Source of the DNA: Fonticula alba ATCC 38817
Lineage: Eukaryota > Protista > Nucleariida
Reading direction: 5' to 3' (one strand)
Length of the DNA stretch: 42,285 nt
NCBI GenBank assembly: GCA_000388065.2
Contig: KB932206.1
The notes beneath the pieces are model-generated. The model saw nothing but the letters and a program-made list of their open reading frames with translations, did not search any database and had not been told where the DNA came from. This document shows positions 1 through 40,100 of the stretch, piece by piece; within the stretch, counting starts at the first letter, position 1; every line of letters begins with the position of its first letter. Made by a program: the position numbers and the translations under genes.

Positions 1-1692
1 CCCCCCCCGCCTTGCGCCGCCCCCTTGCTTTTCTCCCCCACTTGCCCGAGGCGGATACGTGATCGTCTGTGTGTGTGTGTGTGCATGGGCATATACATAT
101 GCGTGTGGCTGTGGATGCACGCTCTCGTAGCCAGGTAAAGTAGTGGACCTCTTTTCTCTCTTAGCACCGCGAAAATGCCCCGCCTCGACGCATGCTCCCC
201 CAAGCACATATGCATGTGCGTGCGCACACGCCCATGCGCATCGCTGTCCCCCCTCCTCCTCTCCCCCCCCCCCCTCCCCGACATCCCCATTCAGCACACT
301 TCCTTAAATCTGGTAACAGGGTTGACATCTGCCCGGGCGCACTCCTCGGCTGGCCCTTCGCAGACGGGTGCGACTTTTTCGTCGTAGCACGCCCCCAACC
401 GCATGGCGCCAGACGGCCGTGCCCCTGTGGACCCCCCTCGCCCGGGGTCTTCCCTTGCTCTCTTCCCAGGGGGCCGGGGCGGATCCCAGGCACACACTCA
501 CCTCGTGCACCACAGGAGCCTCATTCTCGTGGGGGGGCACTTCCCCACGTGCCCAGGCCCTGGACGGTTGGGGCGACGTCCGAGCACACCCACACGCATG
601 CAAATTCCCGCACACATCACGCCTCCGTCCCCCGAGAAGCGCCCAGAGCAGGAGGGCGGGGCAGCTGCACCTACACGCAGGGGACCGCGATCGGGCGCCT
701 TGCACATACGGTCCACACGCGGATCGGCGAATGGGGGGCCTCCAGACGGTCGATTCCTGGTGGGAATCGAGTTTTTCGTTTCTCCACTGGGCCTTCGGCT
801 GTTGCAATACCCGTGCGCCGGTCTGCGGGGGATGTGCCCATCTTCGCGTGCTCCTGTGGCGTGCTGCCTCCCTGCTCGAAGGCCATCCTCAGGGGGGGAT
901 GGGTGAGCGTGTGTGTGTGCCCTTCTTTGCTGCGACCGTGCTCGGTACGCTGCCCCGATCGCACCCAAGGTCTGACCGGTTGCTGCCAGCATCCCTGGCA
1001 GCGGGATGAGTCCACTTCTGTGTTGGCCGCGCTCTCGCTCGGCGTCCGTTTCCCCTTCCCCTGCCCTCCGGTGTGGGGGTCCCGCAGGGGAGGGGGCTGC
1101 CGCCGTGTGGTGGAGGCCTGTGCCCTGTGTCCCGTTTCTGCGCAGGCGCTGAGTGCCCTCTCGCGCGCTCCCGCCCACTTCCCTTCACCGGGTTGAGGAC
1201 GGGGCCGCCAGTCGGGGAGCCCGCGTCCCGGGTGGCCACTTCCTCGCAGCCTCTAAATAGCTGTGGATTGTTACTGAACGAGTCAATTGTGTGCGAGAGC
1301 GAAAGCCCAGAGGCGGGTGTTATCCTTCGGCGTGGCCTTTCCCCATGGCTTCCTCGATCCCACCCGCCTCTATAGCCCCCATTTTCCCGCCCCCTCTCTT
1401 CCCTTCATTTTTAAAAATTGAATTATCCGACACCCCATTTTCCCGCGCCGGCAGGGGGCGCAAAGAAGGAGGGGTGACCGCGCTGCATCGAAATAGCATG
1501 CCCTCGCGCAGGGAGGCGGCAGGGCCCCATATGGGGGGGGGGGGGGAGTACGCCCGCAATTGGAAAAAACACCGAGGGAAGGAAAACACACAGGGGCCCC
1601 CCCCCTCCCCGGGCTCCGGACCAAATACAAGCTGATGTGTGTGTGTGTGTGTGTATGTGGGCACAGGGGATGTGTGCCCGCGAATGTGTGTC

Positions 1693-4030
1693 CTATACCA
1701 CGGCATCCAGCGAGACTGCCACAAATAGGGCCATCATCGCGGACAGAGTGCTGGCGAGAAGGCGCCCGATGCCGGCCAGGGCATCGCTCGCGCGGGCCGA
1801 GGCGTACCCGGTTGGCTCGGGCCCCGGGCGGCCCGGCCAGGCCCGGTCGACCGTGGCCAGCCAGCCACGCTTGCCGCGCAAGGACTGGAGCTGGGATCGG
1901 CCGCGCGAGGGGAGCGATGTCAACTGCGCCAGCACCCCGGCACATAGGAGGTGCACCGATGCATACGCGGCCAACACTTGGCGGACTGCTCGCAGCCCGA
2001 AGTGCAGAGTCACCCGGCAGGGCTGGTCTGGTGCGCGTGCACCCGCATGTGTACGTGTCAGAGCCTCCGTGTGGCGGTTTTCCTTCTTTTTTTTCCTTTC
2101 CACCGACGGCCTCGAGGATTCGACGGCCCGGGGACGGAGGGAGAGGCACCCACAGGCAATGGCGAATGTGGGCCATATGTGAAAGAATGAGACGCACCGA
2201 TGGCCGGCAAAAGACGCATGGCCAGGAGGACGATGCCAAGTGGCCAGCGCGCGATGAAGCGCCTCCAGCGGCCGTGCAGCAGCCCGGGGAAGTGCCCTCC
2301 CGGCTCTTCCCCGGCATCGTCGCTGTCGGCGGTCGCGCCGCCGCGGGTGACCGGGAACCCGGGCAACCCCTCGGCCAGGCCGCCCAGGCGCACAGCCTCT
2401 AAATGCTGCATGCTACGAGGGTCGGCCATGGGTAGGTTGAGAAAAAGGGCACATTGCTCCTCGGAGCAGGGCACAAAGTCGCGCAAGAAGCTGGGACAGG
2501 AGGTACCCCGGTTTGAGGGCCCATGTGCCGGGCATTCGGAGCACCGGTGTGCCTTGCTGGCAGCCAGGAAGTCACAGTCGCAGGGCGCCGCCCGGGGCCG
2601 GTGCCCTCCGGCCAGGGCATCCTCATCCTCCTCGAGCATCGGCTCGGACAATGCCAAGGGGTGATCCACCCGGGAGAGCATCATCAAGAAGGCGGCCACC
2701 ACGCGCAGGCGCTCCTGGCCGAAGGCAGACACGGCACCAGGCTGACTGAGGTCGACATGGGGCGAGTTGGCTGCATATGTGTGCCGGCGTGCGGCCACCA
2801 GGCGCCGGCGATCGCGGATGAGCAGACGCAAGAGACCTATTCCGACCGGTGGTTAGGGGTGCTCCACATCGTGCGCAAGGAGGCCCATGTGTGGGGGGGG
2901 GGGGGGGGGGGGGGGGGGGGCGACAGCGAGCAGCCCGGCCCGAGCCCAATGGCATGACGTACCCTCGATCGAGAGTGACACATCGTCCGACCAATGGTTA
3001 GATCCCGCGGTCCCGGTGACATCGGCTGGCCGCTGGAGCTGTGGCGGCCGGGCCACTACCCGATGCACCAGCGGCAAGTCGAGCAACAAGCCAAGTACCC
3101 GGGCAAGGAGAATCGATGCCATGGCCGCCAGCAGGGACCGATCGGCCGGAGGGGGATCTGCCTCGGCCGAACTGCCGGACCCATGGCCCAGCTTCGGCTG
3201 CCGCCGCGCCGGATGGTCCGCCCCTGGGAATGGTCCCTCGGCAGCAGCGGCAGCAGTAGCCGCGGAGAAGAAGCGCCCCCCAGGCCCGAAGCCCTCCTCG
3301 GCAGCCGCATGGACAGCGGCCGCGGCCGAGGACATTCCACCGGCCGCCGGCGCGAAGAAAGACGTGCCCATGGGCCCTGCCGCCGAGGAGCTCCGGCCGG
3401 CCACCTGTCCCTGCAGGGTCCGATCACGCAACAACACACGCACCGTGGCCAGAGTGCCGGACATCAGGGGATACAGGTCCGTGGCGCGACGGAACACCGC
3501 CGGCCGGGGGAACTGAAAGGACAGGAGGTCCGCCGCATCGGCCGCGCCGCCAATTGAGCCGCCCTCGGCCACGGCGTTGTACGCATGACTCAAGGCCTGG
3601 AAGGCGGCAGTGGCTTCGGGGTGCGAGCTGCCCCGGCAAAGCCCCGTCCGAAGGGGGGGGGGGGGGAAGGCGCCGCACAGGAGGCGGGTCAAGGGGAGGG
3701 AGATGGTTAAAAACCGGCCTGCTGTCGGCTGTCCCACCTACGGGCGGACCAGGGCAGAGGCGGACGGGAGGAGGGAAAAGCCCCCGGGCGGATGGTCAGC
3801 GGGGCGTGAGGCGGTGGGTACCACTTGTCCGGGTGGATGAGGCGCGACCGGCCAAGGAAGGCAAGCCGGACGGCGGCATCCGAGGGGGGCTGGTCCCACA
3901 AGAGCGGTGCCTCCAGGCCGAGGACTTGATATGGGCGGCCGGCACGCGAGTGTTCCAGCACCAACTCGATGATCTCATGCGCCGGGAGGGCATCTCTAGA
4001 GCCGAGGTCGGCTTCGTGGACGGCCGCCAT
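1693..4030 (-). CDS. J-domain (DnaJ/Hsp40 type III) protein, about 615 aa, 4 exons
   Basis: Exons 4030-3822, 3627-2963, 2836-2198, 2027-1693 (1848 nt, in frame, all GT-AG, ends TAG). Splicing rebuilds a J-domain: PYQVLGL...SDAAVRLAFLGRSRLIHPDKC/SHPEATAAFQALSHAYNAV, with the HPD motif. Hydrophobic C-terminus LLASTLSAMMALFVAVSLDAVV. Confidence 0.85.
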
Positions 4031-6807
4031 CTTGGGCGCCGTATTGTGGGCTCGGTGCCTGTGCACGTCTCCCTGTGAGATGCGCTTAGGAGGGGGGGGG
4101 CGGGGGGGAGGAGGGAAGAGGGAGCTGGCCAGGGGGGAGACAGGAAGATGGGGCAGTGGATGGGGAGAGGCGCGATGGGAGAGGGCTGACTGATGATCCT
4201 GTCAGGATCTGGCAGATACGTGGCCGATGAAGCAGGGACACGTGCGGCGTCAGCACACCAGCCTGGCAGGGCGGAGGAACAGGCGTCGACTCGGCCACCT
4301 TCCGTTCCGACGCGGTGGAAGCCGCGGCGACGGAGAAATGAGCAAGCTGATTTGGACACAACCAGGGCCAGGGAGGGGGCGATCATGCCTGGCACTTGGC
4401 TCCAGCCCCGGCTCGGGACACAACACAACGTGGTGCCAAGACAGAGCACCACGACTGGGGGGGCCCCAGGCGCCGTATCCTCGCTCGCTGGGGCTAGTCA
4501 CACAATGGCCTAGATCTCTGGCAGGCACGGGGAACAGAAGCAGGGGGGGGGGGGGGGCGGGGCAAGTGACAGATTGGATCCGCTCCGGCCGGGGTCAGGG
4601 AAGCGGCGAAATGGTCCCACGGGAAGGAGGGGGACAGGGGTGAAGCAAGCTTGGGCCACAAGAGCTTTCGGCGGTGGCCGTGCGGGGAGACCAAATTAAC
4701 AGCACGAGGAGAATGCACGGCCGGTTTCCCCCGAGCGAGGGTGCCCTCATCCAAGGCCGCCCGGGAGATGGCACTCGAGTCGCCGGCCCGTGGAGGCGGT
4801 GGAAAGGGCACCCCGGTCGGTGGCATCCCTTCGTCGGATCCGGCCCCAACGCGCGGGGAGAAGTGTGAAAAAGGGATCCCCAGTTCGCACACTGCGAGTC
4901 CGGCCCGCGCAGGCGAGTCCTCGCATGTGAAAGTTTCCGTCTCCGCACACGGCAGAGCCCCCGGGACTCGAGGGGGGAGGGGGGGGGGGGAGGTCCAAGG
5001 CGGGCGTGGAAAAGGGAGACCGCTGATCGCGTATCGACAGGCACGGCCGGGATTCGCTCCCCGGTTCTCGCCCTCTGCCAGCGAGAGGCCCGCGGTTGTG
5101 GCCTATTCGCCGTGTTCCGAGAGTCTCCAAACACAGGGGCCTGAGCATCCTCCACAAGAGGCGTATTTGTACGCACGTTCTCCGGGCCCCGGGGAAAAAA
5201 AGGGAGGAGGTCCGGTGAGAAATGGGCGCTCCTTTCCGGGCGCCCTCCCAAAGCCGGTCCTGGGGGCGTGTATGGCCCCCCTAGCTGCGAGCAACTCTTC
5301 GCCGCCCTTCCGGCCCCCCCCCCCCAGGGGATGGAACAGACAGCGGTGTCGATGTCCGGATGATGGGATATCGGTCCCTGGAGAAGAGGATGAGCTACGC
5401 GCGCAGGGGGGCGCGGTGCCGGGTTGTGGAAGGCATGCTCGGAAGAGGGAAGTACTACCGTGTGAATGCGGCCGGGCCAGGGGGGGGGGGCCGGAAAGCC
5501 ATCGGCAACGACGCCAGGACAAATGGAGGGCGGGAATCACTCCACCCCGGTGATCGGCGACCAGGCGCAGCTGATCCCAGCCTGCAGGAGCGTGGGCCTC
5601 CGATGCCGGGCTGACCCCGGCCCGGTGGATGCGCCGTGCCCATGATTCTTTTGTGAATGGTATTTGCCCGGGTGGCCGATATGAAAACCTTTACCAAGTT
5701 GGGGATACTTTGCAGTAGCCGGGCAGGATGATCTTCGCGACCTGCGAGTTGGATGTGTGCAGGGCGGTGAAATTGACGGCGGCAGAGGCACCAGCCTCGT
5801 CCAGGTTGGCGTGCCCTCTCCCGGCGCACCGATGCGAATGTGAGGGTAAGTTGCTGGAGTCTCACACTGGGGGTTCCCGGCAACGCCGCGCGCCTTGGGC
5901 CCCCTCCTAGGGGGGGTGGGGCGACCGAAGTGCGTCGTGCCTTGTTGCGTGCTCGCCGGGGCGTGCTGCCGAGCGTGGCATCTCATCCGTGCGCCATCTT
6001 GGGCGTACATCTGTGGGGGGAGGGGGGGCCGGCGCGAGGGACGACAACGGGAGTGCGCCCGTCCCGAGCTCAGCCGATCAACGCTCCCACCGAGCGGCGG
6101 TGGCACCGCAGAGTACACATGAGCCAATCAACCGAGAGAAGATGCTGGAGCATCATGCCCCCCCCTAGCCCCACTCCAGGAGGAGGGGGCGGGGCGGGGC
6201 GGGGCGGGGGGGGGGGGGGGNNNNNNNNNNGGGGGGGGGGGGGGGGCCGGCGCAGGGAAACGAGGCGCCACACCGTTTTCGGGACCTTTTCACAGACGAG
6301 CGCCCAGCCCCTGGTTCTCGGAGGGGGGGATGTCCTTGCGGATAGATAAAATCCGGATTATAATTGACGGGGATCCCTTGCTAACTCGGGTACAGCAAGT
6401 GCCCCGGACTTTGGGGCCGGGCCCTCTACCTCTCTCTCTCTCTCCCCGGAGCCGGGGTCCTCTCTCATTCCCGGTGTCTGCTCACGAGGGACAGGCAGAC
6501 ATGCCCCTCGGCACTTCGCCGGGCCCGCGTCTGGCCGGGCACCCCGCCTGACGGGGACAAGCGGCGCTCCCGGCTCCGGCAGTGGAGGGGGCCACAGGGG
6601 CAGGGTGACATAGTGTCGGATACGTGTCTTCGGCAGCAGAGTCTGCTGCCGGCCCGGGTGCACCTGGCCCTGCGTTCCCATGCAATCTCCAAACGCGTGT
6701 GTACCGGGATGGGCGTGCGCCCGCCCGCCCGCCCTCCCCCCCGGCGTTCTCCATCTGTCATGTCGGGTTTGTGCGGGCGGGCACGCGAGCGTCTGCCGGC
6801 CCGCCCT

Positions 6808-6843
6808 GGTGAGGGGGCCGGCCGGGGGCGGGGGGTGGAGGTG

Positions 6844-6878
<35 letters not shown>
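6808..6878. repeat. G-rich tract followed by a (CT)n microsatellite
   Basis: Visible ggggc runs, then (ct)n at about 6847-6878. Representative of dozens of (CT)n, (CA)n, (GT)n and poly-C/G tracts across the window. Confidence 0.85.
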
Positions 6879-6881
<3 letters not shown>

Positions 6882-8664
6882 CGTCGTTAGGCCACTTCGT
6901 CTCCCTTTCTTCCTCCGGATCCACCGCCGTGGCCCAGCGTGTTTCGGGGAAAATAGCAGCAACGCCACCCCGGGCGTTCAGCGAGGAGACTGCCCCGTTG
7001 TCTTCTGTGGCCGGAGCTGGCCCCGGCTGCGGGCATGATCTTGCCGACTGGGAATGCTCCTCGTGTGAGGTGGCTTTCCAGGTATTCCGGCCGTTGGCGT
7101 GCACCTTCGGCGACAGGCTTTGTAAACTCGCGGGCCCATCCGTCCGGTGGCGGTCATCGGCCTCGTCTCGCTCTGCGGGGAGTCATGATGTCACCATCCC
7201 TGGGGTTGTCATTAATGCTCTCGGCCCTCTTGGGGCCGGCGCACACGCACGAACCCTTCGACGCCGGCCCCGTGTAGGAAAGGGCACACGGCTCCGGGCT
7301 ACCGGCCGGGGAGGATTGTCCCCGCCTCTGCCCTGGTGCCGGGGGCAAAGGGGGGCCGACCGGCGCGGGGAGATATGCCTCATCAAAGTGCGCGTTCCCC
7401 TCCAGGCTCGCCCTAGGTGTCGGGTTCTAGTACCAAGGCTGGAGGACCGAGGGTTTGGCCTCGCTTTCGGTACGTAAAAAGTATGCGCCCGTTCTCATTC
7501 GAACATGTGTGTGTGTGTGTGTGTGTGTGTCTGGCCGTGGCTGTGGCGCCCGGAGATGGTGTGCCGGCGGCTAGGGTGTGTTCTGGGCGCCGGTGCCGAA
7601 GGAGGGGGGGGCTTGTTTCCGGAAGGATGCGAGGCCCTCCCCGCCCCCCCCCCCCGCCCCCCGGCCCCGGCCCCGGCCCCTAGCGTCTTGTGCGGCGGAG
7701 TCGCCGTGTCTGGGCGCCTTTTCCGGTAGAAAATTGACAAGCCCGGACTACCCGGCCACACTGGGAGGATGGTTGCCGGGGGGGGGGGGGGCGCGAGGGG
7801 CGGGGAGATTGGCAGAGGCCCAGGCGCGAACATGGTGCCGGCAACGCCCCTCCCTGGGCGCCTTTCGCGCCCTCCGGCCAGGGCTAGCCCCAGCAGGGGG
7901 AGAGAGAGAGAGAGGGGCCAGCGGGCTGGCTCCCCCTCCGGCGGAGGCTGTGAGATCCCTTCTGGAAAAGGTCGTTTTTTTCCCGTCCCCATGTTCCCTT
8001 CCCATTGTTCCCCAGAAGGGGGGAAGACGGACGAAGAGGCCGGCGAGGGGGAGGCCCGTAGGCCGGGCCGGGAGCTGGGCCCGGTCCCGGTCCCCCGGCG
8101 CGCCCTCCGCTGGCTCGCCGTGCGCCTCCCGCTCTTGCGGGGAGAGGCCGTTGCACGCTTTGGTGCCTCCCCCTAGTGGAGGTACGCGACGCCATATCAC
8201 CAACCTCCCCGGAGGGGTGTACTATATCCCACCACCCCCTGAAGCGTCTGCTCGCACCTGTACGTCACCTCCTACCACCCCGCCTTCTTCTGGCAACGTG
8301 CGGGCTCGCATCCTCCCCCTTTCTTTCTTTCTCTCTCTCCCTCCCTCCCCCCCCTCTCTCTCTCTCTCCCTCTCTCCCTCTCTCGCGGCATCGTGTGCCT
8401 GACGCGCCGTCCTCCCCCCTCTCCCTGTTGCGCACCGCACCATAGCGCTTCTCCTCCCTCTCCCACCTACCTCGCGCCTCCAACTTTTCCTGTCCGGCCC
8501 CCGCACGACAGCCCCGCCCGGACTGCTAGTCCCCGCTTTTCTATGTACGTCCCTGGCCCGACCTTCCGGTCCACACACCTTCTCCTCCCCTCTCCACCAT
8601 GGCCTCGTGTGACTCTCTAACGCGCACCCCTTCCTTGCCCATCTGCCCCCGTCCGGTTCCTAGA

Positions 8665-11250
8665 ATGAGCTCGAAGCGTTCTACAGGGGACACTTCTCTG
8701 AGCGGCAAGAAACAGCCCAACGTCGTGCGTCCCTATTCGCACCCATGTCTGGCCTCGTTCCCTCCCTCTCTCTCTCTCTCTCTTTCTCTCTTTCTCTCTT
8801 TCCCTCTTTCCCTCTTTCCCCCTCTTCTCCTCTCTCTGTCTCCTCTTCCTCCTCCTCTTCCTCCTCCTCTTCCTCCTCCCCCCCTCTTTCATCCCTACCA
8901 GTGTCTGATTCCTCTTCTTCGCCCCTCCTCCCGGACTGCCCCATCCAGGATGAGTACCTGCTGAACAAGCTCATGGGTCTCGGCTTCAAGCGCAAGAATG
9001 TCGTCCACGTCCTGCAGGCCTCGGACAACGAGTTCGATGAGGCCCTGAACATGCTTCTCGATGACCCGACTGCCAGCACCCCCACCAAGGAGTCTGCCCC
9101 GGCCCCGGCCCCGGCCCCCACCCGCCAGGCCGCCGTTCTGGTTCGTCCCCAGTGCTAGCACCTTCCTCTTGTTTCTCCATCCCCCCCCCCTCTCTCTCTC
9201 TCTCTCTCTCCCCTTCCCCCTCCACCTCTCTCCGGTCTGACATGCCTACCGCCCCTGTGCCCAATTGCCTACCCTCGCCTTGTCTTGGCATCGTACAGCG
9301 CATTGGCTCCAAGCCCCCGGCCGCCACGACTCCGGCCGCCCCGGCCAAGGCCGCCTCTCCAGCTGCCACCCCGGCCGCCTCGACGAAGGCCGCCTCCCCC
9401 GCTGCCCCCTCGGCTGCCGCCGCCCAGCAGCCGACCGGCTCTCAGCAGCAGGCCAAGACTCGTCCCGCTGCGGCCGGGCGCACTGCTGCTACCGCCTCCA
9501 CTGCTCCGGCCGCTGCCCAGTCTCAGCAGCCTGCCAGCGCCACCTCTGTCCTGCCCGCCACCGCCCGCTGGGGCGAGCAGGCCAAGGCCGCCGGTTCGTC
9601 CACCGCCTCCGAGACCGGGTCCTCCGCCCAGGAGAGCGCCGACACCTCCACCAAGGCCACCGGCGAGAAGACTTCCACCAAGGCTGCCGCCGCTTCCGCC
9701 GCCAAGGCCGGTCCTACTGTCGTGCGTGGCGCTCCATCCCCTCGCCGATGCTCCCCCTGCCCTCCTTCCGCCCCCGCCCCTGCCCCCCGGTCCATGCGCA
9801 CCACACACAGACACATGCAGGCTCTTCCGGATTCGGCTAACTCGGGCACCCCCTTCCCTCGCTCCCCCGCCCCCCCCCACCCCGCCCCCCACCCCTTCCT
9901 CCGTGTGCTTCCCATCGGCCACAGGCCGCTGCTGCTCCCCTGGCCGAGCCCGTGGACTTCACCTTCCCCGCTGGTTACAAGGCCGAGGCCCTGCTCGATG
10001 GCCACTGGCTGCCGGTTGTCGTCAGCGAGGCCACCGCCACCGGCTACAATGTGGTCTTCCTGGGCTACGAGCACGCGGCCACCGTTCCCTCGACGCACAT
10101 TCGCCCCCTGCAGCTGATCAAGGGCCCTTCCTTCGTGGTCAGCCAGCTGGTGGAGGCTTGCTTTACCCAGGACCAGACTTGGTATTCCGCCATCATCAAC
10201 GCGGTTCTCCCGAACAACCTTTACAGTGTCGTGTACGCCGAGTACGGCAACCAGGAGAACCTGCCGGCCGACCAGATCCGCACCATTTCTTCCTTCTCGC
10301 CCACTTTGTCGGCGGCTGATACCACCAAGCAGGCCGCCGCTGCCCCTGCCGTTGGTGCGTATATGGGCGCACATGCTCCTTGTTACTTCTTCTGCTCGGT
10401 CTTTCGCTCCTTCCTCTTTCGCGGCCTCCCGTGCCTTTGGGATTGCCCCTGCCCGCCGCCGCGCCTCCCCCTCCCCCCCCCGCTCCCCACTCTCACCACC
10501 TCACCGCTCCCTTCCTTTGCCCCCCCCCCGGCCAACGTAGTTTCTTCCACCTACGCTGTCCACGACACCGTTGAGGCTTGCTACACCGCCGATCAGAAGT
10601 GGTACCAGGCCACCATCGTCGCGGACCACGGCAACGGGACCTATCGTGTCATGTATGCCGGCTATCTGAACGAGGAGGACCTGCCCGAGTCGGAGATCCG
10701 CCCGATTTCCGGGGCCTCCGCCTCGCTCGGCATGCCGGCCGTCATCCCCGGGCAGCAGGCCCCCTCGGCCCCGGCGCAGCAGCAGCAGCACACCTACGCC
10801 GTCGGCGAGTATGTCGAGGCCCTTTTCTCTGACGACAACATCTGGTACCCGGCTCAGATTACCGACGTCTCGGGTGACTCGTACACCGTCCTCTACGTGA
10901 CTTACGGCAACAAGGAGGTCCGTCCGCCCAGCTGCTTGCGGCCGCTGCCGGCCTCCGCCGGTGATGCGGCGGCCGCCGCCCTTGCCGGCAGCATGATGCC
11001 CATGCCGGGCTTCACTGCCATGGTGGACCCCCCGATGTCGGTGGCCCAGACGACTGGCGGTGCTTCTCGCCAGCCCCAGTCTTCCAGCGAGGTCCACGTC
11101 AACCAGAATGTCCTTGCGTGCTACGTCGATGGCCACCTCTACCCGGCCGTCATCACCCATGTCCTTGAGAACGAGAAGGGTGTCACTGTGAACTACCTGG
11201 ATTACGCCGACAGCGGGGACCTTCCCCTCTCCGCCATCTACTTCATGTGA
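8665..11250 (+). CDS. UBA domain + five SMN-type Tudor domains, about 604 aa, 5 exons
   Basis: Exons 8665-8724, 8949-9140, 9299-9721, 9925-10354, 10541-11250 (1815 nt, in frame, GT-AG). UBA-like DEYLLNKLMGLGFKRKNVVHVLQASDNEFDEALNMLL (MGF-type loop LGF). Ala/Ser/Thr/Pro linker follows. Five Tudor repeats, e.g. VEACFTQDQTWYSAII...YSVVYAEYGNQENLP. Confidence 0.85.
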
Positions 11251-11946
11251 GGGGCGGATGGGAGTGTCTATGTGCGTGCGTGTACATATGCATGCACATG
11301 TGTGCAACGCGGGGACCACCACCGGTCCCGCGCCGTGCGCTGTGTGCCTGGCCATGCGTACGCCCGCGCCGACCCTCCCGCCTCCCTTTTCTCAGATGTG
11401 CGGCCGCGCATGCGCGCGCGCGCGTTGTGTCCTTGCGCGGGGAGAGCGGGCGAACGGCTTCTCCCTCTCCCTCCTGCCTTGTCGCTCCTCCCTCCCGCAC
11501 CCCTCTGGCGCGCGCGCGCGCGCGCGCAAAGAGGTCACCCCCTTTCAATACCATTTCTCAGTCTCCAGCTCCGCTTCTGTGTTTTGTGTGTCTCTTTCGC
11601 CACCCCCCCCCCCTGCCCCATGCACTATCGGAGACCAGGCAGCCTTCCCCGTGCTTCCTTCCCTGGCTCCCGGTAGTTTGCTTGGGCTCGCTTCGTTTTT
11701 TCTCCTTTTTTTTCTCCCCTTCTTCGGATTGAAAAAGGAGAGGGCGAAGGCACCTACGCCGTTGGTGCCGTCCTTTATTTTTGACAAAGAGTGGCGTGTG
11801 TGTGGGGGGGGGGGAGAGAGAGAATGCGTGTGATGTTTCTTCAAAGACATCTCTCCCTCGGCACCGCCCTTCTCCTTGCCCTTCCTGCTTCTTTCACAGG
11901 GCACGGCTTGTCTTTGCGCGGCCGCCTTTTTTTTTTTGCCCACCGC

Positions 11947-28066: not shown

Positions 28067-28210
28067 TGTGTGTGCGTGTGTGCGTGTGTGCGTGTGTGCG
28101 TGTGTGNNNNNNNNNNGTGCGTGTGTGCGTGTGTGCGTGTGTGCGTGTGTGTGTGGGCGTGCGTGTGTGCGTGTGTGCGTGTGTGCGTGTGTGCGTGTGT
28201 GCGTGTGTGT
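28067..28210. repeat. (GTGTGC)n hexanucleotide microsatellite containing a 10-N gap
   Basis: Directly visible run gtgtgcgtgtgtgcgtgtgtgc..., upstream of the SURF6 start codon. Confidence 0.9.
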
Positions 28211-29091: not shown

Positions 29092-30109
29092 ATGGCCGAC
29101 GAGGAGGAGACTTTCAAGTATGATGTCGGGCCTGCATACCGGCCTCTCCTTCTCTCCCCTTTGTTGCTTTTCATCCGTTGATTGGGCCTCTAACACCACC
29201 CTCCTGCCTGTCTCCCGCTCCATTTGCTCAGCTTCGAGCTCAGCGAGGCCGGTGCCTCGATTGCCGAGAACAGCCCTGTCCGTCCTGCTCCCCCCCCCCC
29301 TTTCTCTCTTTCTCTCTTTCTCTCTTTCTCTCTNNNNNNNNNNNNNNNNNNNNNNNNNNNNNNNNNNNNNNNNNNNNNNCTTTCTCTTTTTCTCTCTTTC
29401 TCTTTTTCTCTTTTCCTCTTCCCCCCCCCCCCTTCCTGCTACACCTCCTTCCTCTCTCTCTCTCTCTCTCTCCTTTCTTGTTCGTACCTGCCATCCTCAC
29501 CGCGCTTCTCCCCCACACCCTTAGATCAATGAGGAGGTTGTCTCCTTCGGCGAGGAGCACGACTTCAGTGGTGAGCACCAGGCCGTCCCGGCCAACCTGC
29601 GCTCGACCTCTCCCTTCATGACCAAGTACGAGTGTGCTCGTCTTCTGGGGACCCGCGCTCTTCAGATCAGGTCCGTTGATTGGCCGTCAGCTGGTCTGCT
29701 TGTTTGTGAAGCCCCACTGGTGGTGGGGCCTTTTCTGGTCTCCCGGCGCCCGGAACTTACGCACGTGTGTGGCTTTCGATCCCCTCCCTCGGTGCATGCA
29801 TAGCATGAACGCCCCGATCACTGTCGAGCCCGCTGGCCTGACGGACCCGCTTGCGATTGCCGAGAAGGAGCTTCGCGAGGGGAAGGTCCCGCTGATTGTC
29901 CGCCGCTACTTGCCCAATGGTAGGTCCATCCGGATTGTGATGCGCGCATGCATGCGTACCCCTGTGCCCGGGGGGAGGCGCCGCGCTGCCAATAGCCAAC
30001 ACTGACCTTTCGCCGCCCTTCTTCTTTTTTTTCTCTCTGGACCCCCCCCCCACCCCCAGGCACCTACGAGGACTGGCCCGCTTCCGAGCTTAGCTACAAC
30101 TACAACTGA
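29092..30109 (+). CDS. RPB6: RNA polymerases I/II/III shared subunit RPB6 (RPABC2/POLR2F), about 127 aa, 5 exons
   Basis: Exons 29092-29117, 29232-29277, 29525-29670, 29804-29919, 30060-30109 (384 nt). Signature [28 protein letters not shown]...[31 protein letters not shown]. Confidence 0.96.
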
Positions 30110-31904
30110 TTGAGTTGTCTCTTCGCTCGCTTCTCTCGGGCTCCTGTGCTTTCGATGCCTTCTCCCGCCGAGTCGACGCCTCCTCCAATCTCTCTCTCTC
30201 TCTCTCCCCCCCCCCTTGCCCTCTTGCGTTGGGGTATGCGCGGGAGTGTGTGCGCGTGTGGACGTGAATGCATCTTTGAGATCCCACTCTCATCCTAGGC
30301 TCCCCCCTTTCTCTTCCACCACCCACCCCCTCCAGCATATTTCCCCCCAATGTGAGGCGAGGGAGAGGAGGCCTGCGCGCGCGCCGGTCGCTGCTGCCCC
30401 CTCCCCCCCCCCCCCCCTTTCGACCCGGCCAGCCGCCGGGCCATGTAAAATATAAAATCACCCAATCTCCGTTGCATGTGCCTCTCCGACATCCATCGCC
30501 GCGGACCGGTTCCATTCCCTTCTGTTCGACTGACCCGGGTGTGCAGGGCAGTACGGGGGGCCCTGAAAGTCGCCGGCCAGGGCAACGCGCTGAGGGGGTG
30601 GGGGGGGGGGGCGGACCGGGAATAGGGGGCCGGGGAGCGCAGCATACAAGAGAGGCTGGAGGAAACGTATGTGTCGATCATGTGACCCAGATATGTCACA
30701 CCACCTCATCCAGCTGCCCGGGGCCAGGCGCAGGCCGTTGGGGCCTGGAGTAGAGAGGGTGCCAGGGGGGGCTCCTGCGGTCACCCAGAGCACCCGCCAG
30801 CGGCGCGGACAAGGCCACGGGGATGGGCAGGCATCGCCCACTGAGCCAAGGAAGGCCTGGGCGGGCGGCCGGCCAGTGCTGGGCGTTCGGCAGGGCAGGG
30901 GGGTGGGGCCGGGCGGGGAAGTTGGGCGCTCCTAGGGTTTCGGCATGCCGCCGGCCGGGGCCTTGGTGTGTCTGCCTTTCGAATGTGTTTATTCCCGCTC
31001 CTGTCCTTGCGACGGAGCGGGTGGGTGGGTGAGTGTGGGGGGGGGGGGGGGTACTTGCCGTAGAGACGGGCAATGTTTCAGCGCTGGCTCGTTTCTTCCT
31101 TGGCCCGGAAGGCAGGCCGCTCGGCTCACATCCGCCCCCCCCCCCCACCTGCTCGAGAGACACACGAATGACTTGGGGCCGACGACTGCTGGCCGATCCG
31201 GGCCGCGAGCCCATAGGGTTGCCTTGGCTGTTGTTGTTGTTGTTGTCGGTTGGGAGGAGTCACGAGGGGTCCTGTCTGGTTCGCTTACCCGGCCCGAGGC
31301 CGTGAGAGGGCGGAGGGATCGGCGGGCAGGCGGCCCGGCTGCCAGGAGCACCCGGAAGCCGGGCGGTCATCTGGGTGATGCCGTGCGCAGGGCCCCGGCG
31401 TGTATATGCACGAGTGTGTCTGACGCTGCTCGGGCCGAGCCCGGGCCGGGCCCCGTGCGCGCGCGCGCACTCACACGGACAGGCCCCGGCTGGCGGAGGC
31501 CCTCCCNNNNNNNNNNNNNNNNNNNNNNNNNNNNNNNNNNNNNNNNNNNNNNNNNNNNNNNNNNNNNNNNNNNNNNNNNNNNNNNNNNNNNNNNNNNNNN
31601 NNNNNNNNNNNNNNNNNNNNNACAGAAGGCGAGATTCATGTGCACCCCCCCTGCTGGCCTGGGCCCGGGAGGCAGCCCCGGCAGCCCAGAACAGCGCATC
31701 CCTCTCTCCCTCCCCTCTCTCCCCCTCCTTCTGTTCTTTTTCTCGCCGCGTCTTCACGCTTTTCTCTGTGAGCACTACCCCCCCCCCTCTTCCTCGGCAC
31801 ACACTGCTTTTTTTCTTGCCCCTTCCCTGCCTTTCCCGGGGCCGCTCTAACCGTCGAGCCTCCTCTGCCTCTTCCCCCGTTCGTTTGCCGCCTCAGAAGT
31901 CACC

Positions 31905-32847: not shown

Positions 32848-33262
32848 NNNNNNNNNNNNNNNNNNNNNNNNNNNNNNNNNNNNNNNNNNNNNNNNNNNNN
32901 NNNNNNNNNNNNNNNNNNNNNNNNNNNNNNNNNNNNNNNNNNNNNNNNNNNNNNNNNNNNNNNNNNNNNNNNNNNNNNNNNNNNNNNNNNNNNNNNNNNN
33001 NNNNNNNNNNNNNNNNNNNNNNNNNNNNNNNNNNNNNNNNNNNNNNNNNNNNNNNNNNNNNNNNNNNNNNNNNNNNNNNNNNNNNNNNNNNNNNNNNNNN
33101 NNNNNNNNNNNNNNNNNNNNNNNNNNNNNNNNNNNNNNNNNNNNNNNNNNNNNNNNNNNNNNNNNNNNNNNNNNNNNNNNNNNNNNNNNNNNNNNNNNNN
33201 NNNNNNNNNNNNNNNNNNNNNNNNNNNNNNNNNNNNNNNNNNNNNNNNNNNNNNNNNNNNNN
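32848..33262. other. Assembly gap (N run)
   Basis: Continuous Ns. Smaller gaps at 6221-6230, 28107-28116, 29334-29379, 31507-31621 and 36386-36466, most of them flanked by simple repeats. Confidence 1.
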
Positions 33263-36084: not shown

Positions 36085-36646
36085 AGCGAGCCTCGGGGGC
36101 CCATCCTGCGGTTTGCCCCGGTGCTCCCTTCCCCCCCCCCCCCCGCCCCCTCCCCTTGCCCCGCAAGATCGCCACCCGGCGTCTGCCGGCTGTCTGGTCC
36201 AATAGATGCGCGCACGTGACCCTTCTGGAAGTGGGGATTCAGCGTACTGGACGAGCAAACGATGACTTGGTTGGGCACCATCCCTCTGGCTCTTTTCTTT
36301 CCTGGTGGAGGTGTGGGGGGGGGGGGGGGGGGGGGGGGGGAGGGGCCATGGCGGACATGCTGTGTGGGGCAAAGGGGCACAAGGANNNNNNNNNNNNNNN
36401 NNNNNNNNNNNNNNNNNNNNNNNNNNNNNNNNNNNNNNNNNNNNNNNNNNNNNNNNNNNNNNNNNNAAAAAAAAAAGCCACTGCTTTCCAGGCCGCCGGC
36501 GCCTGACGGCCCGTCAGTTCCACCTCCCCTCCAGCGCCAGCCGCAAATAGCTCTCCCTTTTCCTCCTACTTCCTGGCTTTCCTCCCTTTCGCCCCTTGAC
36601 CCCTCGCCCCTTTCTCAGGGCTGTTCACGCCCGCCATCCCGCCATC

Positions 36647-37133: not shown

Positions 37134-40100
37134 CCCCCCCCCCACCTGCTGGTCTAATCTCTCGCTGCCAAACCCACACACATCACCATAGTCCTATGCC
37201 TACCGGCCCAGCCCCCACCATGGCGAGGTGGAGGTCGGTGCCACCCATGTTGGCAGCGGTCCGCTGTATCCCCGCCTGAGTGATGGTCAGCCTCCGGCCA
37301 CCGAAACAACCGAGTCCTTCGCCGCTCCCCCTCGGCCGACCGAGCAGTATATGCACGATGTGCAGGATCTCCGCCAGGCCCCGGGAGCCGTGTCCATTGG
37401 CGCGCACTTCCCCCCGGCCGGTCCCATGGCCCCGATTGGCCTGACGCAGCCCGGCCTCTTCCCGGAGACATGTTTATGCCTTCTTTGGGCTTGGGGCGGG
37501 GAGGGTTGTGTGCTGGATGCCGCTCCTGGGGGGGGGGGGGGCACAAAAGTCTCCCCGCCTGGGACACATTGGGGCGGGCATGGACCGTTTGGGCAAGGGG
37601 CGCAGGATCAGCATGGGTGCCGGCTTCTGTGCCATATTATTTTCTCCTTTCCACTCCAGGCGGTCTGCGTCAGGGGAGCAATTTGAACAAATGATAACGC
37701 CGATCCGGCGCCCCCGACGGCGAGGGGCAGGGGGTCTTTTTCACGAGCCACCAGTTCCTAGCCCCCTTTTTTGCTTGGGGAGGGCGTGGGGGCCCGGGTG
37801 GCTGAGCCGTCGCCCTCCGCACAGGCTTTCGGGCCCATTGGCCCCCATCATCCAAGCATGTTGGCCGTTGCCTGCCCGCCAGCACGCCCCCCTCCCCCCT
37901 CGCCTTGCCGCGCCTGGTGGCGGGGAAAAAAAAAANNNNNNNNNNNNNNNNNNNNNNNNNNNNNNNNNNNNNNNNNNNNNNNNNNNNNNNNNNNNNNNNN
38001 NNNNNNNNNNNNNNNNNNNNNNNNNNNNNNNNNNNNNNNNNNNNNNNNNNNNNNNNNNNNNNNNNNNNNNNNNNNNNNNNNNNNNNNNNNNNNNNNNNNN
38101 NNNNNNNNNNNNNNNNNNNNNNNNNNNNNNNNNNNNNNNNNNNNNNNNNNNNNNNNNNNNNNNNNNNNNNNNNNNNNNNNNNNNNNNNNNNNNNNNNNNN
38201 NNNNNNNNNNNNNNNNNNNNNNNNNNNNNNNNNNNNNNNNNNNNNNNNNNNNNNNNNNNNNNNNNNNNNNNNNNNNNNNNNNNNNNNNNNNNNNNNNNNN
38301 NNNNNNNNNNNNNNNNNNNNNNNNNNNNNNNNNNNNNNNNNNNNNNNNNNNNNNNNNNNNNNNNNNNNNNNNNNNNNNNNNNNNNNNNNNNNNNNNNNNN
38401 NNNNNNNNNNNNNNNNNNNNNNNNNNNNNNNNNNNNNNNNNNNNNNNNNNNNNNNNNNNNNNNNNNNNNNNNNNNNNNNNNNNNNNNNNNNNNNNNNNNN
38501 NNNNNNNNNNNNNNNNNNNNNNNNNNNNNNNNNNNNNNNNNNNNNNNNNNNNNNNNNNNNNNNNNNNNNNNNNNNNNNNNNNNNNNNNNNNNNNNNNNNN
38601 NNNNNNNNNNNNNNNNNNNNNNNNNNNNNNNNNNNNNNNNNNNNNNNNNNNNNNNNNNNNNNNNNNNNNNNNNNNNNNNNNNNNNNNNNNNNNNNNNNNN
38701 NNNNNNNNNNNNNNNNNNNNNNNNNNNNNNNNNNNNNNNNNNNNNNNNNNNNNNNNNNNNNNNNNNNNNNNNNNNNNNNNNNNNNNNNNNNNNNNNNNNN
38801 NNNNNNNNNNNNNNNNNNNNNNNNNCCCGAAGGGCCATCTGGTTTCCCCCCCCCCCCCTCCCCCCTTTCCTGCTCGCTAATCCCCCTCGAATAGGTTACC
38901 TCGAATGCCCTGTCCGGGGATGTGTATACGGTGAAGCGGCGGTTCAGCGACTTCGACAAGCTTTGCAACATCATGCACCAGATCTATCCGACGGTGGTGG
39001 TTCCCCCCTGCCCGGCCAAGAAGATGGTCGGCCGTTTGGAAGGGGACTTCATCGACAGCCGGCGCATGGCGCTGGAGGACATGCTGCGCCGGATCCTGCA
39101 GCACCCGGTCCTGTCGCGGTCCGAAGCGCTCGCGCGCTTCCTCCGCGCCGAGACCATCGCCGATGTGGAGCGTCTGCCTGCGGAGTTGCGCGCGGCCGCC
39201 GCCGCTGAGGGGGAGATCGTGTCGATTGGCGCTGGTGGCGCCAATCCGGGGACGCGCAGCCGGCGCGACTCGGTGGCCTCCACGCACTCGGTGGCCTCGC
39301 AGTACTCCCTGGCGTATGGGCGCCCGTCGTCCGGGTCCTTCAAGGCCGATGCCAATGTCCGTGCCTCCTGGATCGGGCGTCTCATGGACACTCTGGAGCT
39401 GGGCGATCTGGGTGTCATCATCAGGTGCGTGCCCGGCTGCCGGCTGCTGTGCAGCAGTCCAATCCCCAGGTGGAGCAGCTTGTTCCTCGTGCCGCTCTTC
39501 ATTCTCTCCTTTACGCTGTCCTGATCGGCCCTTCGCTCTTCGTCTCCCTTGCTGCATGCAGACACTAACCCTCACTGCGCCCCTTGGATAGCCCGCCTGT
39601 GGACCCGGATCCCTGGTTCTCGAACATGGCAGCTCGCCTGGACATGCTGGAGGTGGACCTGGAGCAGGTCGCGTCGACGGCTGAACGTTCGCGCAGCGCC
39701 TGGCTGGCCCTCGGCTTCTCCCTCGATGGGTATTGGGACGCGGTGGACATGCTTGGGCCGCACACGGCCTTCTTCACCGGTCCTGGGCAGACGGCCGACA
39801 TCTCGTCCTTCGATGCTGGCAGTGAGTTTGGTGGGTCGATCGGCGCATCGGCCTCCAGTGACATGATGGCTTCCGGCGGGGCGGCCCCCTCCTCCCTGGG
39901 CAAGTCTCCGGCCGCCGGTGCGGCCTCGTTGCCCCTGCACCAGCACGCCACGCAGACGGGGGAGCTGCCCATTTTCGATACCCTCAAGCGGCAGGTGGCC
40001 TTCCAGCGGAGTGTCGATTCGCACGCGCTGCAGTCCTCGATGGACTCGTTGGACATTGTGTCTCTCGGCATTGTGGATGTGCACCTGCGCTACATCAGCA

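What the first reader, a model, noticed from the sequence alone, without database searches (positions are those of the whole stretch)
8665..11250. UBA + five tandem SMN-type Tudor domains: candidate methylarginine-ubiquitin dual reader
Seen in the sequence: an N-terminal UBA, a linker of about 170 aa rich in A/S/T/P, then five compact Tudor domains of about 50 aa (roughly 9964-10110, 10132-10287, 10552-10707, 10795-10944, 11092-11247), with no catalytic domain. Established knowledge: SMN/SPF30-type Tudors bind dimethylarginine in RG motifs. UBA+Tudor is the TDRD3 combination, but TDRD3 has an N-terminal OB-fold and one Tudor. Multi-Tudor piRNA proteins use longer extended-Tudor units. Inference: this is a multivalent adaptor that could link Arg-methylated RNP proteins (Sm, RGG-box) to ubiquitin-dependent turnover or condensates. 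I do not recognise the architecture as a named family.
Basis: partly seen in the sequence, partly recalled or inferred. Interest (0 to 1): 0.75.

Follow-up and report, generated by a model that had tools for sequence, protein, structure and literature searches.

The report
UBA plus five-Tudor adaptor gene
This is a real five-exon gene of the amoeba Fonticula alba for a non-enzymatic scaffold with one ubiquitin-associated (UBA) domain and five small SMN-type Tudor domains; the same layout occurs in at least three uncultured eukaryotes, so it is a small unnamed family that probably links arginine-methylated proteins to ubiquitin signals.

Summary
The window is Fonticula alba. Exons 8665-8724, 8949-9140, 9299-9721, 9925-10354 and 10541-11250 (+ strand) encode exactly the 604-aa database protein H696_03736, annotated only as "hypothetical / Tudor domain-containing".

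- T2-T4 carry the complete SMN-type cage of four aromatic residues plus Asn.
- T5 has the four aromatics but Asp in place of Asn.
- T1 is degenerate.

A family Tudor profile matches SPF30, TDRD3 and SMN best (E 1e-15 to 4e-14).

The UBA is below Pfam's cut-off in Fonticula. It still folds as a three-helix bundle (pLDDT 80-87) and is clearly a UBA in the relatives.

New here: metagenomic contigs from three further lineages encode UBA-UBA, a low-complexity linker and about seven SMN-type Tudors. In one of them the UBAs and two Tudors lie in a single ORF. The architecture is therefore conserved, not an annotation artefact.

It is not TDRD3 (no OB-fold), SMN, SPF30 or SND1. Binding to methylarginine and to ubiquitin is inferred, not shown.

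Verdict: new variant of a known kind, moderate interest.

The parts
8665..8724 (+). Exon 1 (aa 1-20, MSSKRSTGDTSLSGKKQPNV); the donor follows as GTGCGT
   Evidence: The exon model equals P0001. The conserved Val-Asp dipeptide at the start of the UBA spans the exon 1/2 join and is invariant in the relatives.
8949..9140 (+). Exon 2 (aa 21-84), holding the UBA domain at aa 21-58 (window 8949-9062)
   Evidence: Pfam UBA_7 scores 22.1 bits and UBA 18.7 bits, both below cut-off. PDB hits are RAD23A/B, USP13, UBAP1, TDRD3 and Ddi1 UBA domains. The three-sequence family profile hits UBAP1 UBA2 at 6.9e-6 and the TDRD3 UBA at 2.1e-4. The model shows three helices at pLDDT 80-87.
9299..9721 (+). Exon 3 (aa 85-225): low-complexity Ala/Thr/Ser/Pro linker
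   Evidence: No Pfam family was found. The composition is A 59, T 23, S 21 and P 20 of 170 residues. pLDDT is below 50.
9925..10354 (+). Exon 4 (aa 226-368 plus the first base of codon 369): Tudor 1 and Tudor 2
   Evidence: Pfam TUDOR E 6.7e-9 and SH3_Hsr9 E 2e-4; exon model checked.
9964..10116 (+). Tudor 1 (aa 239-289), with a degenerate cage: L249 L254 F270 Y273 H275
   Evidence: Independent Tudor profile gives 16.2 bits, i-E 3.5e-7 for one sequence. It aligns in register with T2-T5 at 22-27% identity. pLDDT is about 95 in the alignment-based model.
10126..10293 (+). Tudor 2 (aa 293-348), cage F305 Y312 Y329 Y332 N334
   Evidence: 50.5 bits. PDB hits are Drosophila Tudor-SN 2wac at 8.6e-5 and TDRD1 at 1.4e-4. 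Cage.
10541..11250 (+). Exon 5 (rest of codon 369 to the stop codon): Tudor 3, 4 and 5
   Evidence: Pfam TUDOR E 9.3e-21 in 3 stretches, and SMN_Tudor E 2.3e-12.
10546..10716 (+). Tudor 3 (aa 371-427), cage Y383 Y390 Y407 Y410 N412
   Evidence: 43.5 bits. The best SMN_Tudor stretch is 373-415. Cage.
10786..10959 (+). Tudor 4 (aa 451-508), cage F464 Y471 Y487 Y490 N492
   Evidence: 72.8 bits. PDB hits are 2wac at 1e-8, SPF30 at 3.4e-4 and SMN at 4e-3, with the cage residues aligned. Cage.
11086..11247 (+). Tudor 5 (aa 551-604, the C-terminus), cage Y563 Y569 Y587 Y590 with D592 in place of Asn
   Evidence: 29.1 bits. PHF20 Tudor hits at 7e-3. pLDDT is above 90. Cage.

Best explanation
H696_03736 is one expressed five-exon gene for a non-catalytic, mostly flexible scaffold. 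It belongs to a small conserved family built as UBA (one or two copies), a low-complexity linker, then five to seven SMN-type Tudor domains.

Proposed mechanism (inferred). Tudors 2-4, and probably Tudor 5, each use a cage of four aromatic residues plus Asn or Asp to hold a dimethylated arginine in RG/RGG tails. Likely clients are Sm and LSm proteins, fibrillarin-like proteins and other RNA-binding proteins. Several cages on disordered linkers give avidity for multiply methylated clients. The N-terminal UBA carries an LGF loop, which is MGF in the relatives. It would bind ubiquitin, a ubiquitin chain or a ubiquitin-like fold. The protein would then bridge methylated RNP components and ubiquitin-marked partners, most plausibly inside RNP granules, as the Tudor of TDRD3 does in stress granules. 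Tudor 1 has lost the cage and is probably structural.

What is shown: the gene model, the domain identities, the cage residues and the conservation of the architecture. What is inferred: both ligands and the cellular role.
For: Gene and domains.

SMN-type identity. The family profile of 18 Tudors hits SPF30 at 9.7e-16, TDRD3 at 3.6e-14 and SMN at 3.9e-14 over the full domain. Its F/Y/Y/Y/N columns align with the cage positions of those three proteins. Those are the three classic dimethylarginine-binding single Tudors (established knowledge).

Structure. With a 64-row alignment, all five units fold as five-stranded barrels at pLDDT above 90, with linkers below 50.

UBA. Three-helix bundle at pLDDT 80-87. 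The family profile hits only UBA domains in the PDB. The orthologous UBA passes Pfam's cut-off in L001 (UBA_7 31.9 vs 27; UBA 26.4 vs 22.4) and in L003 (UBA_7 27.9 vs 27).

One gene, conserved.
- L003:4259-5902 is one ORF holding two UBAs, a Gln-rich linker and two Tudors.
- In L001 an 80-nt GT..AG intron joins the UBA ORF in frame to the Tudor ORF.
- L009 has the same order of parts.
- The Fonticula UBA is 42% identical to L001's and shares the FDEALN motif.

Expression, indirect. Four runs of one study each hold 0.67 of the sampled 31-mers of 8600-11300. The value expected if all four introns are absent is 0.666.

TDRD3 precedent for a Tudor-driven granule role: PMC2536506.
Against: - No binding was tested.
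- The Fonticula UBA is below Pfam's gathering score.
- The fold search of the small helical bundle was not discriminating: best Z 3.3, with the Ddi1 UBA at Z 2.8.
- T5 has Asp where the Asn sits, and T1 lacks the cage.
- The fold of T1 in the model leans on an alignment that placed canonical Tudors over it.
- The four runs are only guessed to be RNA.
- There is no UBL, PB1, LIR or other docking module that would tie the protein to the proteasome or to autophagy.
Confidence: 0.55

Rival explanations
1. The protein is a multivalent methylarginine scaffold only. The UBA does not read ubiquitin. It serves another protein contact, dimerisation or stabilisation, as some UBA-fold domains do.
For: The Fonticula UBA scores below Pfam's cut-off. 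Fonticula keeps only one of the two UBAs seen in the relatives. The closest PDB match of the family profile is UBAP1 UBA2. Not all UBA folds bind ubiquitin (established knowledge).
Against: The (M/L)GF loop and the helix-3 hydrophobic residues are invariant across the three UBA1 sequences aligned (L001, L003 and Fonticula). L009 also keeps the loop, as MGF. RAD23, Dsk2 and Ddi1, which are ubiquitin-binding UBAs, are all among the hits.
Confidence: 0.25
2. The protein is a chromatin reader. The Tudors bind methyl-lysine, or methyl-arginine, on histone tails, as in PHF20, 53BP1, SGF29, SETDB1 or plant Agenet arrays, and the UBA reads ubiquitinated histones.
For: Pfam also reports Agenet (2e-16), SAWADEE, SH3_Hsr9 and SGF29_Tudor matches. 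T5 hits PHF20 and carries Asp at the Asn position. The Foldseek top hits are AGDP3 Agenet and SETDB1 Tudor arrays.
Against: The family profile scores SPF30, TDRD3 and SMN at 1e-15 to 4e-14, against PHF20 at 1.8e-7. The cage plus Asn signature is the methylarginine type in T2-T4. The Foldseek ranking reflects the multi-barrel layout, with TM-scores of 0.26 or less.
Confidence: 0.12
3. The protein is a diverged TDRD3 orthologue that lost the OB-fold (the TOP3B-binding domain) and multiplied its Tudor.
For: The domain order is the same, with the UBA N-terminal to SMN-type Tudors. The TDRD3 UBA is the second-best PDB hit of the UBA profile (2.1e-4). The TDRD3 Tudor is the second-best hit of the Tudor profile (3.6e-14).
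Against: No DUF1767/OB-fold is present, and only 20 aa precede the UBA. The relatives have 20-60 low-complexity residues there. UBAP1 outranks TDRD3 for the UBA, and SPF30 outranks it for the Tudor. No phylogeny was made.
Confidence: 0.06
4. The fusion is an annotation artefact. The UBA exons and the Tudor exons are separate genes that were joined by prediction.
For: No reads were laid. The linker exons are low complexity.
Against: The UBA and Tudors lie in one ORF in L003. The same order is seen in L001 and L009. The intron phases fit. The conserved Val-Asp spans the exon 1/2 join. The word share of 0.67 matches the fully spliced form.
Confidence: 0.02

Closest known systems
TDRD3 (Tudor domain-containing protein 3)
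   Same: A UBA lies N-terminal to an SMN-type Tudor, and there is no enzymatic domain. The TDRD3 UBA and Tudor are both second-best PDB hits of the family profiles. In TDRD3 the Tudor alone drives stress-granule localisation (PMC2536506).
   Different: TDRD3 has an N-terminal DUF1767/OB-fold and a single Tudor. This protein has no OB-fold and has five Tudors. Its relatives have two UBAs and about seven Tudors.
SMN and SPF30/SMNDC1
   Same: They are the best sequence matches of the Tudor units, over the full domain length and with the same cage positions.
   Different: Each has a single Tudor. SMN also has a Gemin2-binding region and a YG-box, and neither was detected here. Neither SMN nor SPF30 has a UBA.
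SND1/Tudor-SN and the multi-Tudor piRNA-pathway proteins (TDRD1, TDRD6, Drosophila Tudor)
   Same: They share the F/Y/Y/Y/N cage; Drosophila Tudor-SN (2wac) is the best single-sequence PDB hit. The piRNA-pathway proteins also have several Tudors in one chain.
   Different: Those proteins use extended Tudors of about 180 aa with an SN-like part. Here the units are 51-58 aa and are separated by disordered linkers. No SNase domains are present.
Unnamed metagenomic relatives (loci L001/L006, L009, L003/L004/L005/L007/L008)
   Same: The parts come in the same order: UBA, low-complexity linker, array of SMN-type Tudors. The UBA1 motif VD-x-(H/Y)-LL...GF...N-x-FD-x-AL is invariant across L001, L003 and Fonticula. 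L009 has FEEAL at the FD-x-AL position. The Tudors are 36-41% identical.
   Different: They have a second UBA and about seven Tudors. Their linkers are rich in Gln and Pro. L001 and L009 have a Gln/Gly-rich C-terminal tail. Fonticula has no trace of a second UBA. The source organisms are unknown.

Membership tests
TDRD3 | N-terminal DUF1767/OB-fold that binds TOP3B | tested here: not met
   Pfam finds no such domain at E up to 1, and only 20 residues precede the UBA.
TDRD3 | UBA domain N-terminal to the Tudor | tested here: met
   The UBA is at aa 21-58.
TDRD3 | A single C-terminal SMN-type Tudor | tested here: not met
   Five Tudor units are present.
TDRD3 | C-terminal motifs that bind the exon-junction complex and FMRP | not tested
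   No model of these short motifs was available. The protein ends directly after Tudor 5.
SMN | Gemin2-binding N-terminal region and C-terminal YG-box | tested here: not met
   Pfam finds neither PF20636 nor PF20635.
SMN-type (canonical, about 55 aa) Tudor domain | Five-stranded barrel of about 55 aa, with a four-aromatic cage and an Asn after the last aromatic residue | tested here: met
   T2, T3 and T4 meet it fully. T5 has Asp for Asn. T1 does not meet it, having L, L, F, Y, H at these positions.
Extended Tudor (SND1 / piRNA-pathway TDRDs) | A unit of about 180 aa in which the Tudor core is wrapped by an SN-like fold | tested here: not met
   The units are 51-58 aa, the linkers are disordered (pLDDT below 50), and no SNase match was found.
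UBA domain (PF00627 / PF22562) | Score above Pfam's gathering cut-off | tested here: not met
   In Fonticula the scores are 22.1 against a cut-off of 27, and 18.7 against 22.4. The orthologous domain does pass in L001 (31.9 and 26.4) and L003 (27.9).
UBA domain (PF00627 / PF22562) | Compact three-helix bundle with the (M/L)-G-(F/Y) loop after helix 1 | tested here: met
   Helices at 22-30, 35-43 and 49-57 have pLDDT 80-87. The LGF loop aligns with MGF or MGY of RAD23A, UBAP1 and TDRD3.
UBA domain (PF00627 / PF22562) | Binding of ubiquitin or ubiquitin chains | not testable with these tools
   This needs a binding assay.

The most novel reading that the evidence does not exclude
UBA(1-2) plus five to seven SMN-type Tudors is a previously unnamed, conserved eukaryotic family, so far seen in Fonticula and three uncultured lineages. 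It would physically couple arginine methylation to ubiquitin signalling. One example would be gathering multiply methylated RNP proteins and ubiquitinated partners into granules, or clearing them from granules. That would be a TDRD3-like logic built without the topoisomerase arm and with high valency.
Probability: 0.35. Interest if true: 0.6.

Novelty: new variant of a known kind. Interest (0 to 1): 0.42.

Why it matters
Cross-talk between arginine methylation and ubiquitin is known mainly through TDRD3 in animals. A protein in a relative of fungi that pairs a UBA with four intact methylarginine cages, and that is conserved in other protists with even more cages, would be a simple natural model for two questions. 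The first is how valency of methyl-readers drives RNP assembly. The second is whether ubiquitin is read in the same complexes. The finding also gives a name-worthy family to a gene so far annotated as hypothetical. The parts themselves are ordinary, and no function has been shown, so the interest is moderate.

Tried and rejected
- **Word-based protein searches.** I queried the read-through ORF, residues 232-604 and residues 14-66. All three returned only the protein itself and one spurious ABC protein. Low-complexity words probably filled the candidate cap.
- **Full HMMER search.** It gave 987 hits, but the 150 listed are mostly giant multi-Tudor proteins. None of them matches the family's UBA profile locally. 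Ten mid-sized hits scanned in Pfam had no UBA on the same ORF. That says little, because several of them are single exons of split genes.
- **Read laying.** A local tblastn used the window split beside them.
Only the UBA was confident in it, and the search was not discriminating, with best Z 3.3.
- **ESM Atlas.** No usable feature hit.
- **Metagenome scan with the UBA alignment.** It recovered only lineages already found.
- **Synteny.** There is none between the relatives' contigs and this window.
- **Upstream ORFs.** Nine ORFs in 192-7992 have no Pfam family.
- **Literature.** No paper in the library links Fonticula with Tudor, or describes a UBA plus multi-Tudor protein other than TDRD3.
- **Second UBA.** A remnant was looked for in the Fonticula linker and not found.
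- **Spliced protein.** I sent no joined sequence of my own to any search tool. Searches used exon references or the database record P0001. The only joining was a local equality check against P0001.
Full report
**What is there**

The window is GC-rich (about 65%) eukaryotic DNA with CT-rich introns. I read the region by hand and obtained five exons on the + strand: 8665-8724, 8949-9140, 9299-9721, 9925-10354 and 10541-11250. All four introns are GT..AG, and three of the four donors read GTGCGT. A word search with the open frame 9925-11247 returned a 604-aa protein, P0001. NCBI names it "hypothetical protein H696_03736 [Fonticula alba]" and UniRef names it "Tudor domain-containing protein". A local check showed that my exon model translates to exactly that sequence. 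That check was the only time the exons were joined. Every search used exon references or the database record P0001.

**Tudor domains**

- Pfam on the exons and on P0001 gives TUDOR at E 1.9e-29 in four stretches, SMN_Tudor at 1.2e-12 and Agenet at 2e-16.
- A profile seeded with Tudor 4 and grown only on other proteins' Tudors finds five domains in P0001: aa 239-289, 293-348, 371-427, 451-508 and 551-604. They score 16, 50, 43, 73 and 29 bits.
- The five units align in register. T2-T5 are 30-47% identical to each other, and T1 is 22-27% identical to the rest.
- With a 64-row alignment of five-domain fragments from other Tudor arrays, AlphaFold2 folds all five as five-stranded barrels at pLDDT above 90. 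The linkers are below 50 and pTM is 0.31, so the picture is beads on a string.
- The fold of T1 in that model leans partly on the alignment placed over it. Its independent support is the 16-bit profile hit and a Pfam SH3_Hsr9 (Tudor) match at E 2e-4.
- Foldseek returns arrays of small barrels (AGDP3 Agenet, Spt5 KOW, SETDB1 Tudor, MBT) at low TM-scores. This confirms the fold class and nothing more specific.

**Type of Tudor**

I built a profile from 18 Tudor units of this protein and its relatives and searched it against the PDB. The best matches were SPF30 (9.7e-16), TDRD3 (3.6e-14) and SMN (3.9e-14), each over the full domain. TDRD1, SND1 and Drosophila Tudor followed, and PHF20 scored 1.8e-7.

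The columns that align with the aromatic cage and the following Asn of SMN, SPF30 and TDRD3 read as follows:

| Unit | Cage residues | State |
|---|---|---|
| T1 | L249 L254 F270 Y273 H275 | degenerate |
| T2 | F305 Y312 Y329 Y332 N334 | complete |
| T3 | Y383 Y390 Y407 Y410 N412 | complete |
| T4 | F464 Y471 Y487 Y490 N492 | complete |
| T5 | Y563 Y569 Y587 Y590 D592 | Asp in place of Asn |

So three cages are complete, one differs only at the Asn, and one is degenerate. The units are 51-58 aa with no SN-like wrapping, so they are canonical Tudors, not extended ones.

**UBA**

- Exon 2 scores UBA_7 22.1 bits (cut-off 27) and UBA 18.7 bits (cut-off 22.4). It would not be called by Pfam's own rule.
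- Even so, 15 of 17 weak PDB hits are UBA domains, including RAD23A/B, USP13, UBAP1, UBAC1, TDRD3 and Ddi1.
- AlphaFold2 without any alignment gives three helices (22-30, 35-43, 49-57) at pLDDT 80-87, while the rest of the chain stays unmodelled.
- A structure search with that model was not discriminating: best Z 3.3, with the Ddi1 UBA-ubiquitin complex at Z 2.8.
- The decisive support comes from the relatives, described next.

**Relatives**

The exhaustive HMMER search gave 987 hits, dominated by giant multi-Tudor proteins. The closest compact ones (P0047, P0013, P0061, P0062, P0115) are unnamed metagenomic ORFs. I fetched their contigs and found three further lineages with the same layout.

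- **L001.** The ORF directly upstream of the Tudor ORF (5450-6004) encodes two UBA domains. It scores UBA_7 31.9 bits and UBA 26.4 bits, both above cut-off. An 80-nt GT..AG intron (6001-6080) joins it in frame to the Tudor ORF. Two more Tudors follow at 8054-8833.
- **L003, L004 and L005.** These come from three samples. One ORF of 547 aa holds two UBAs, a Gln-rich linker and two SMN-type Tudors. After an intron come a third Tudor unit and four further units, the first of them with a degenerate cage.
- **L009.** The order of parts is the same. Its UBA ORF is 48% identical to that of L001, so it is a separate lineage.

The Fonticula UBA is 42% identical to L001's UBA1 (E 3e-7 pairwise) and shares the FDEALN motif. 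Fourteen columns are invariant across the three UBA1 sequences. They include the Val-Asp that spans Fonticula's exon 1/2 join, which supports that join independently. The three-sequence UBA profile hits UBAP1 UBA2 at 6.9e-6, the TDRD3 UBA at 2.1e-4, and then only other UBAs.

A scan of metagenome contigs with the UBA alignment found only these same lineages. The family is therefore real but rare in what is public. The source organisms of the contigs are unknown. Fonticula has one UBA, with no trace of a second, and five Tudors. The others have two UBAs and about seven Tudors.

**Expression**

The only evidence is indirect. Four small runs of one study, whose RNA status is a guess, each hold 0.67 of the sampled 31-mers of 8600-11300. 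The share expected if exactly the four introns are missing is 0.666.

**How it most likely works**

- Shown: a conserved, non-catalytic chain made of a UBA, a disordered linker of about 170 aa, and an array of SMN-type Tudors with intact cages.
- Inferred from established knowledge of SMN, SPF30 and TDRD3: each intact cage binds a dimethylarginine in RG-rich tails, and several cages on flexible linkers give avidity for multiply methylated RNP proteins.
- Inferred from the conserved (M/L)GF loop: the UBA binds ubiquitin or a ubiquitin-like fold.

The likeliest role is a bridging scaffold in RNP granules. The Tudor of TDRD3 alone is necessary and sufficient for its recruitment to stress granules (PMC2536506). 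Nothing in the protein docks it to the proteasome or to autophagy, so a direct role in turnover is less supported than a scaffolding role.

**Comparison with known families**

It works like TDRD3 without the topoisomerase arm, but it is not a TDRD3. There is no DUF1767/OB-fold, and there are five Tudors rather than one. It is not SMN, because it lacks the Gemin2-binding region and the YG-box. It is not SPF30. It is not SND1, because it has no SNase domains. Whether it descends from a TDRD3-like ancestor is open. TDRD3 ranks second for both domain profiles, but UBAP1 and SPF30 rank first.

**Verdict**

- The architectural reading is supported and extended to a small conserved family.
- The functional reading is plausible but untested.
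- It is a new variant of a known kind. Interest is moderate.

Noticed in passing
window 8599-8664: An in-frame ATG at 8599 lies 22 codons upstream of the annotated start at 8665, with no stop between them (ORF 8599..8964). The relatives begin MSSSKK, MGSTHQ and MARKKK, which favours the annotated Met, but the true start is untested.
   Followed up: partly
window 10355-10540: Intron 4 is 186 nt long, a multiple of three, and has no stop in frame (ORF 9952..11250 reads straight through it). Retaining it would insert 62 Pro/Leu/Cys-rich residues between Tudor 2 and Tudor 3 without breaking the frame.
   Followed up: no
L002:6001-8933 and L011:5001-8526: In two metagenomic contigs, a multi-Tudor ORF of the SMN type (P0013/P0155 with eight Tudors, and P0121) is followed on the same strand by DEAD-box helicase ORFs. 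This may be a Tudor-array plus DEAD-helicase gene.
   Followed up: no
P0087 (539 aa, JGI metagenome): This protein has the highest identity to Tudor 2 (44%). It combines three SMN-type Tudors with two RRM domains.
   Followed up: no
L001:8054-8833 and L009:2567-3394: The relatives end in a Gln/Pro/Gly-rich tail with a few RG dipeptides, '...GGGARGWY' and '...WGGKTQGRW'. Fonticula lacks this tail. It could be a self-ligand for the protein's own Tudors if it is methylated.
   Followed up: no
L001:4004-4603 and L003:2293-2553 (both on the - strand): Both relatives have a PHP-domain gene upstream of the UBA-Tudor gene. This suggests that the two uncultured organisms share gene order. No counterpart was found in the Fonticula window.
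   Followed up: partly
window 6221-6230, 28107-28116, 29334-29379, 31507-31621, 32848-33262, 36386-36466, 37936-38825: These are runs of N, that is, assembly gaps. None touches the gene.
   Followed up: yes
window 192-7992: Nine long ORFs upstream, on both strands, have no Pfam family at E 0.001 or below. The positive GC skew over 2001-8000 suggests a gene on the minus strand there.
   Followed up: partly
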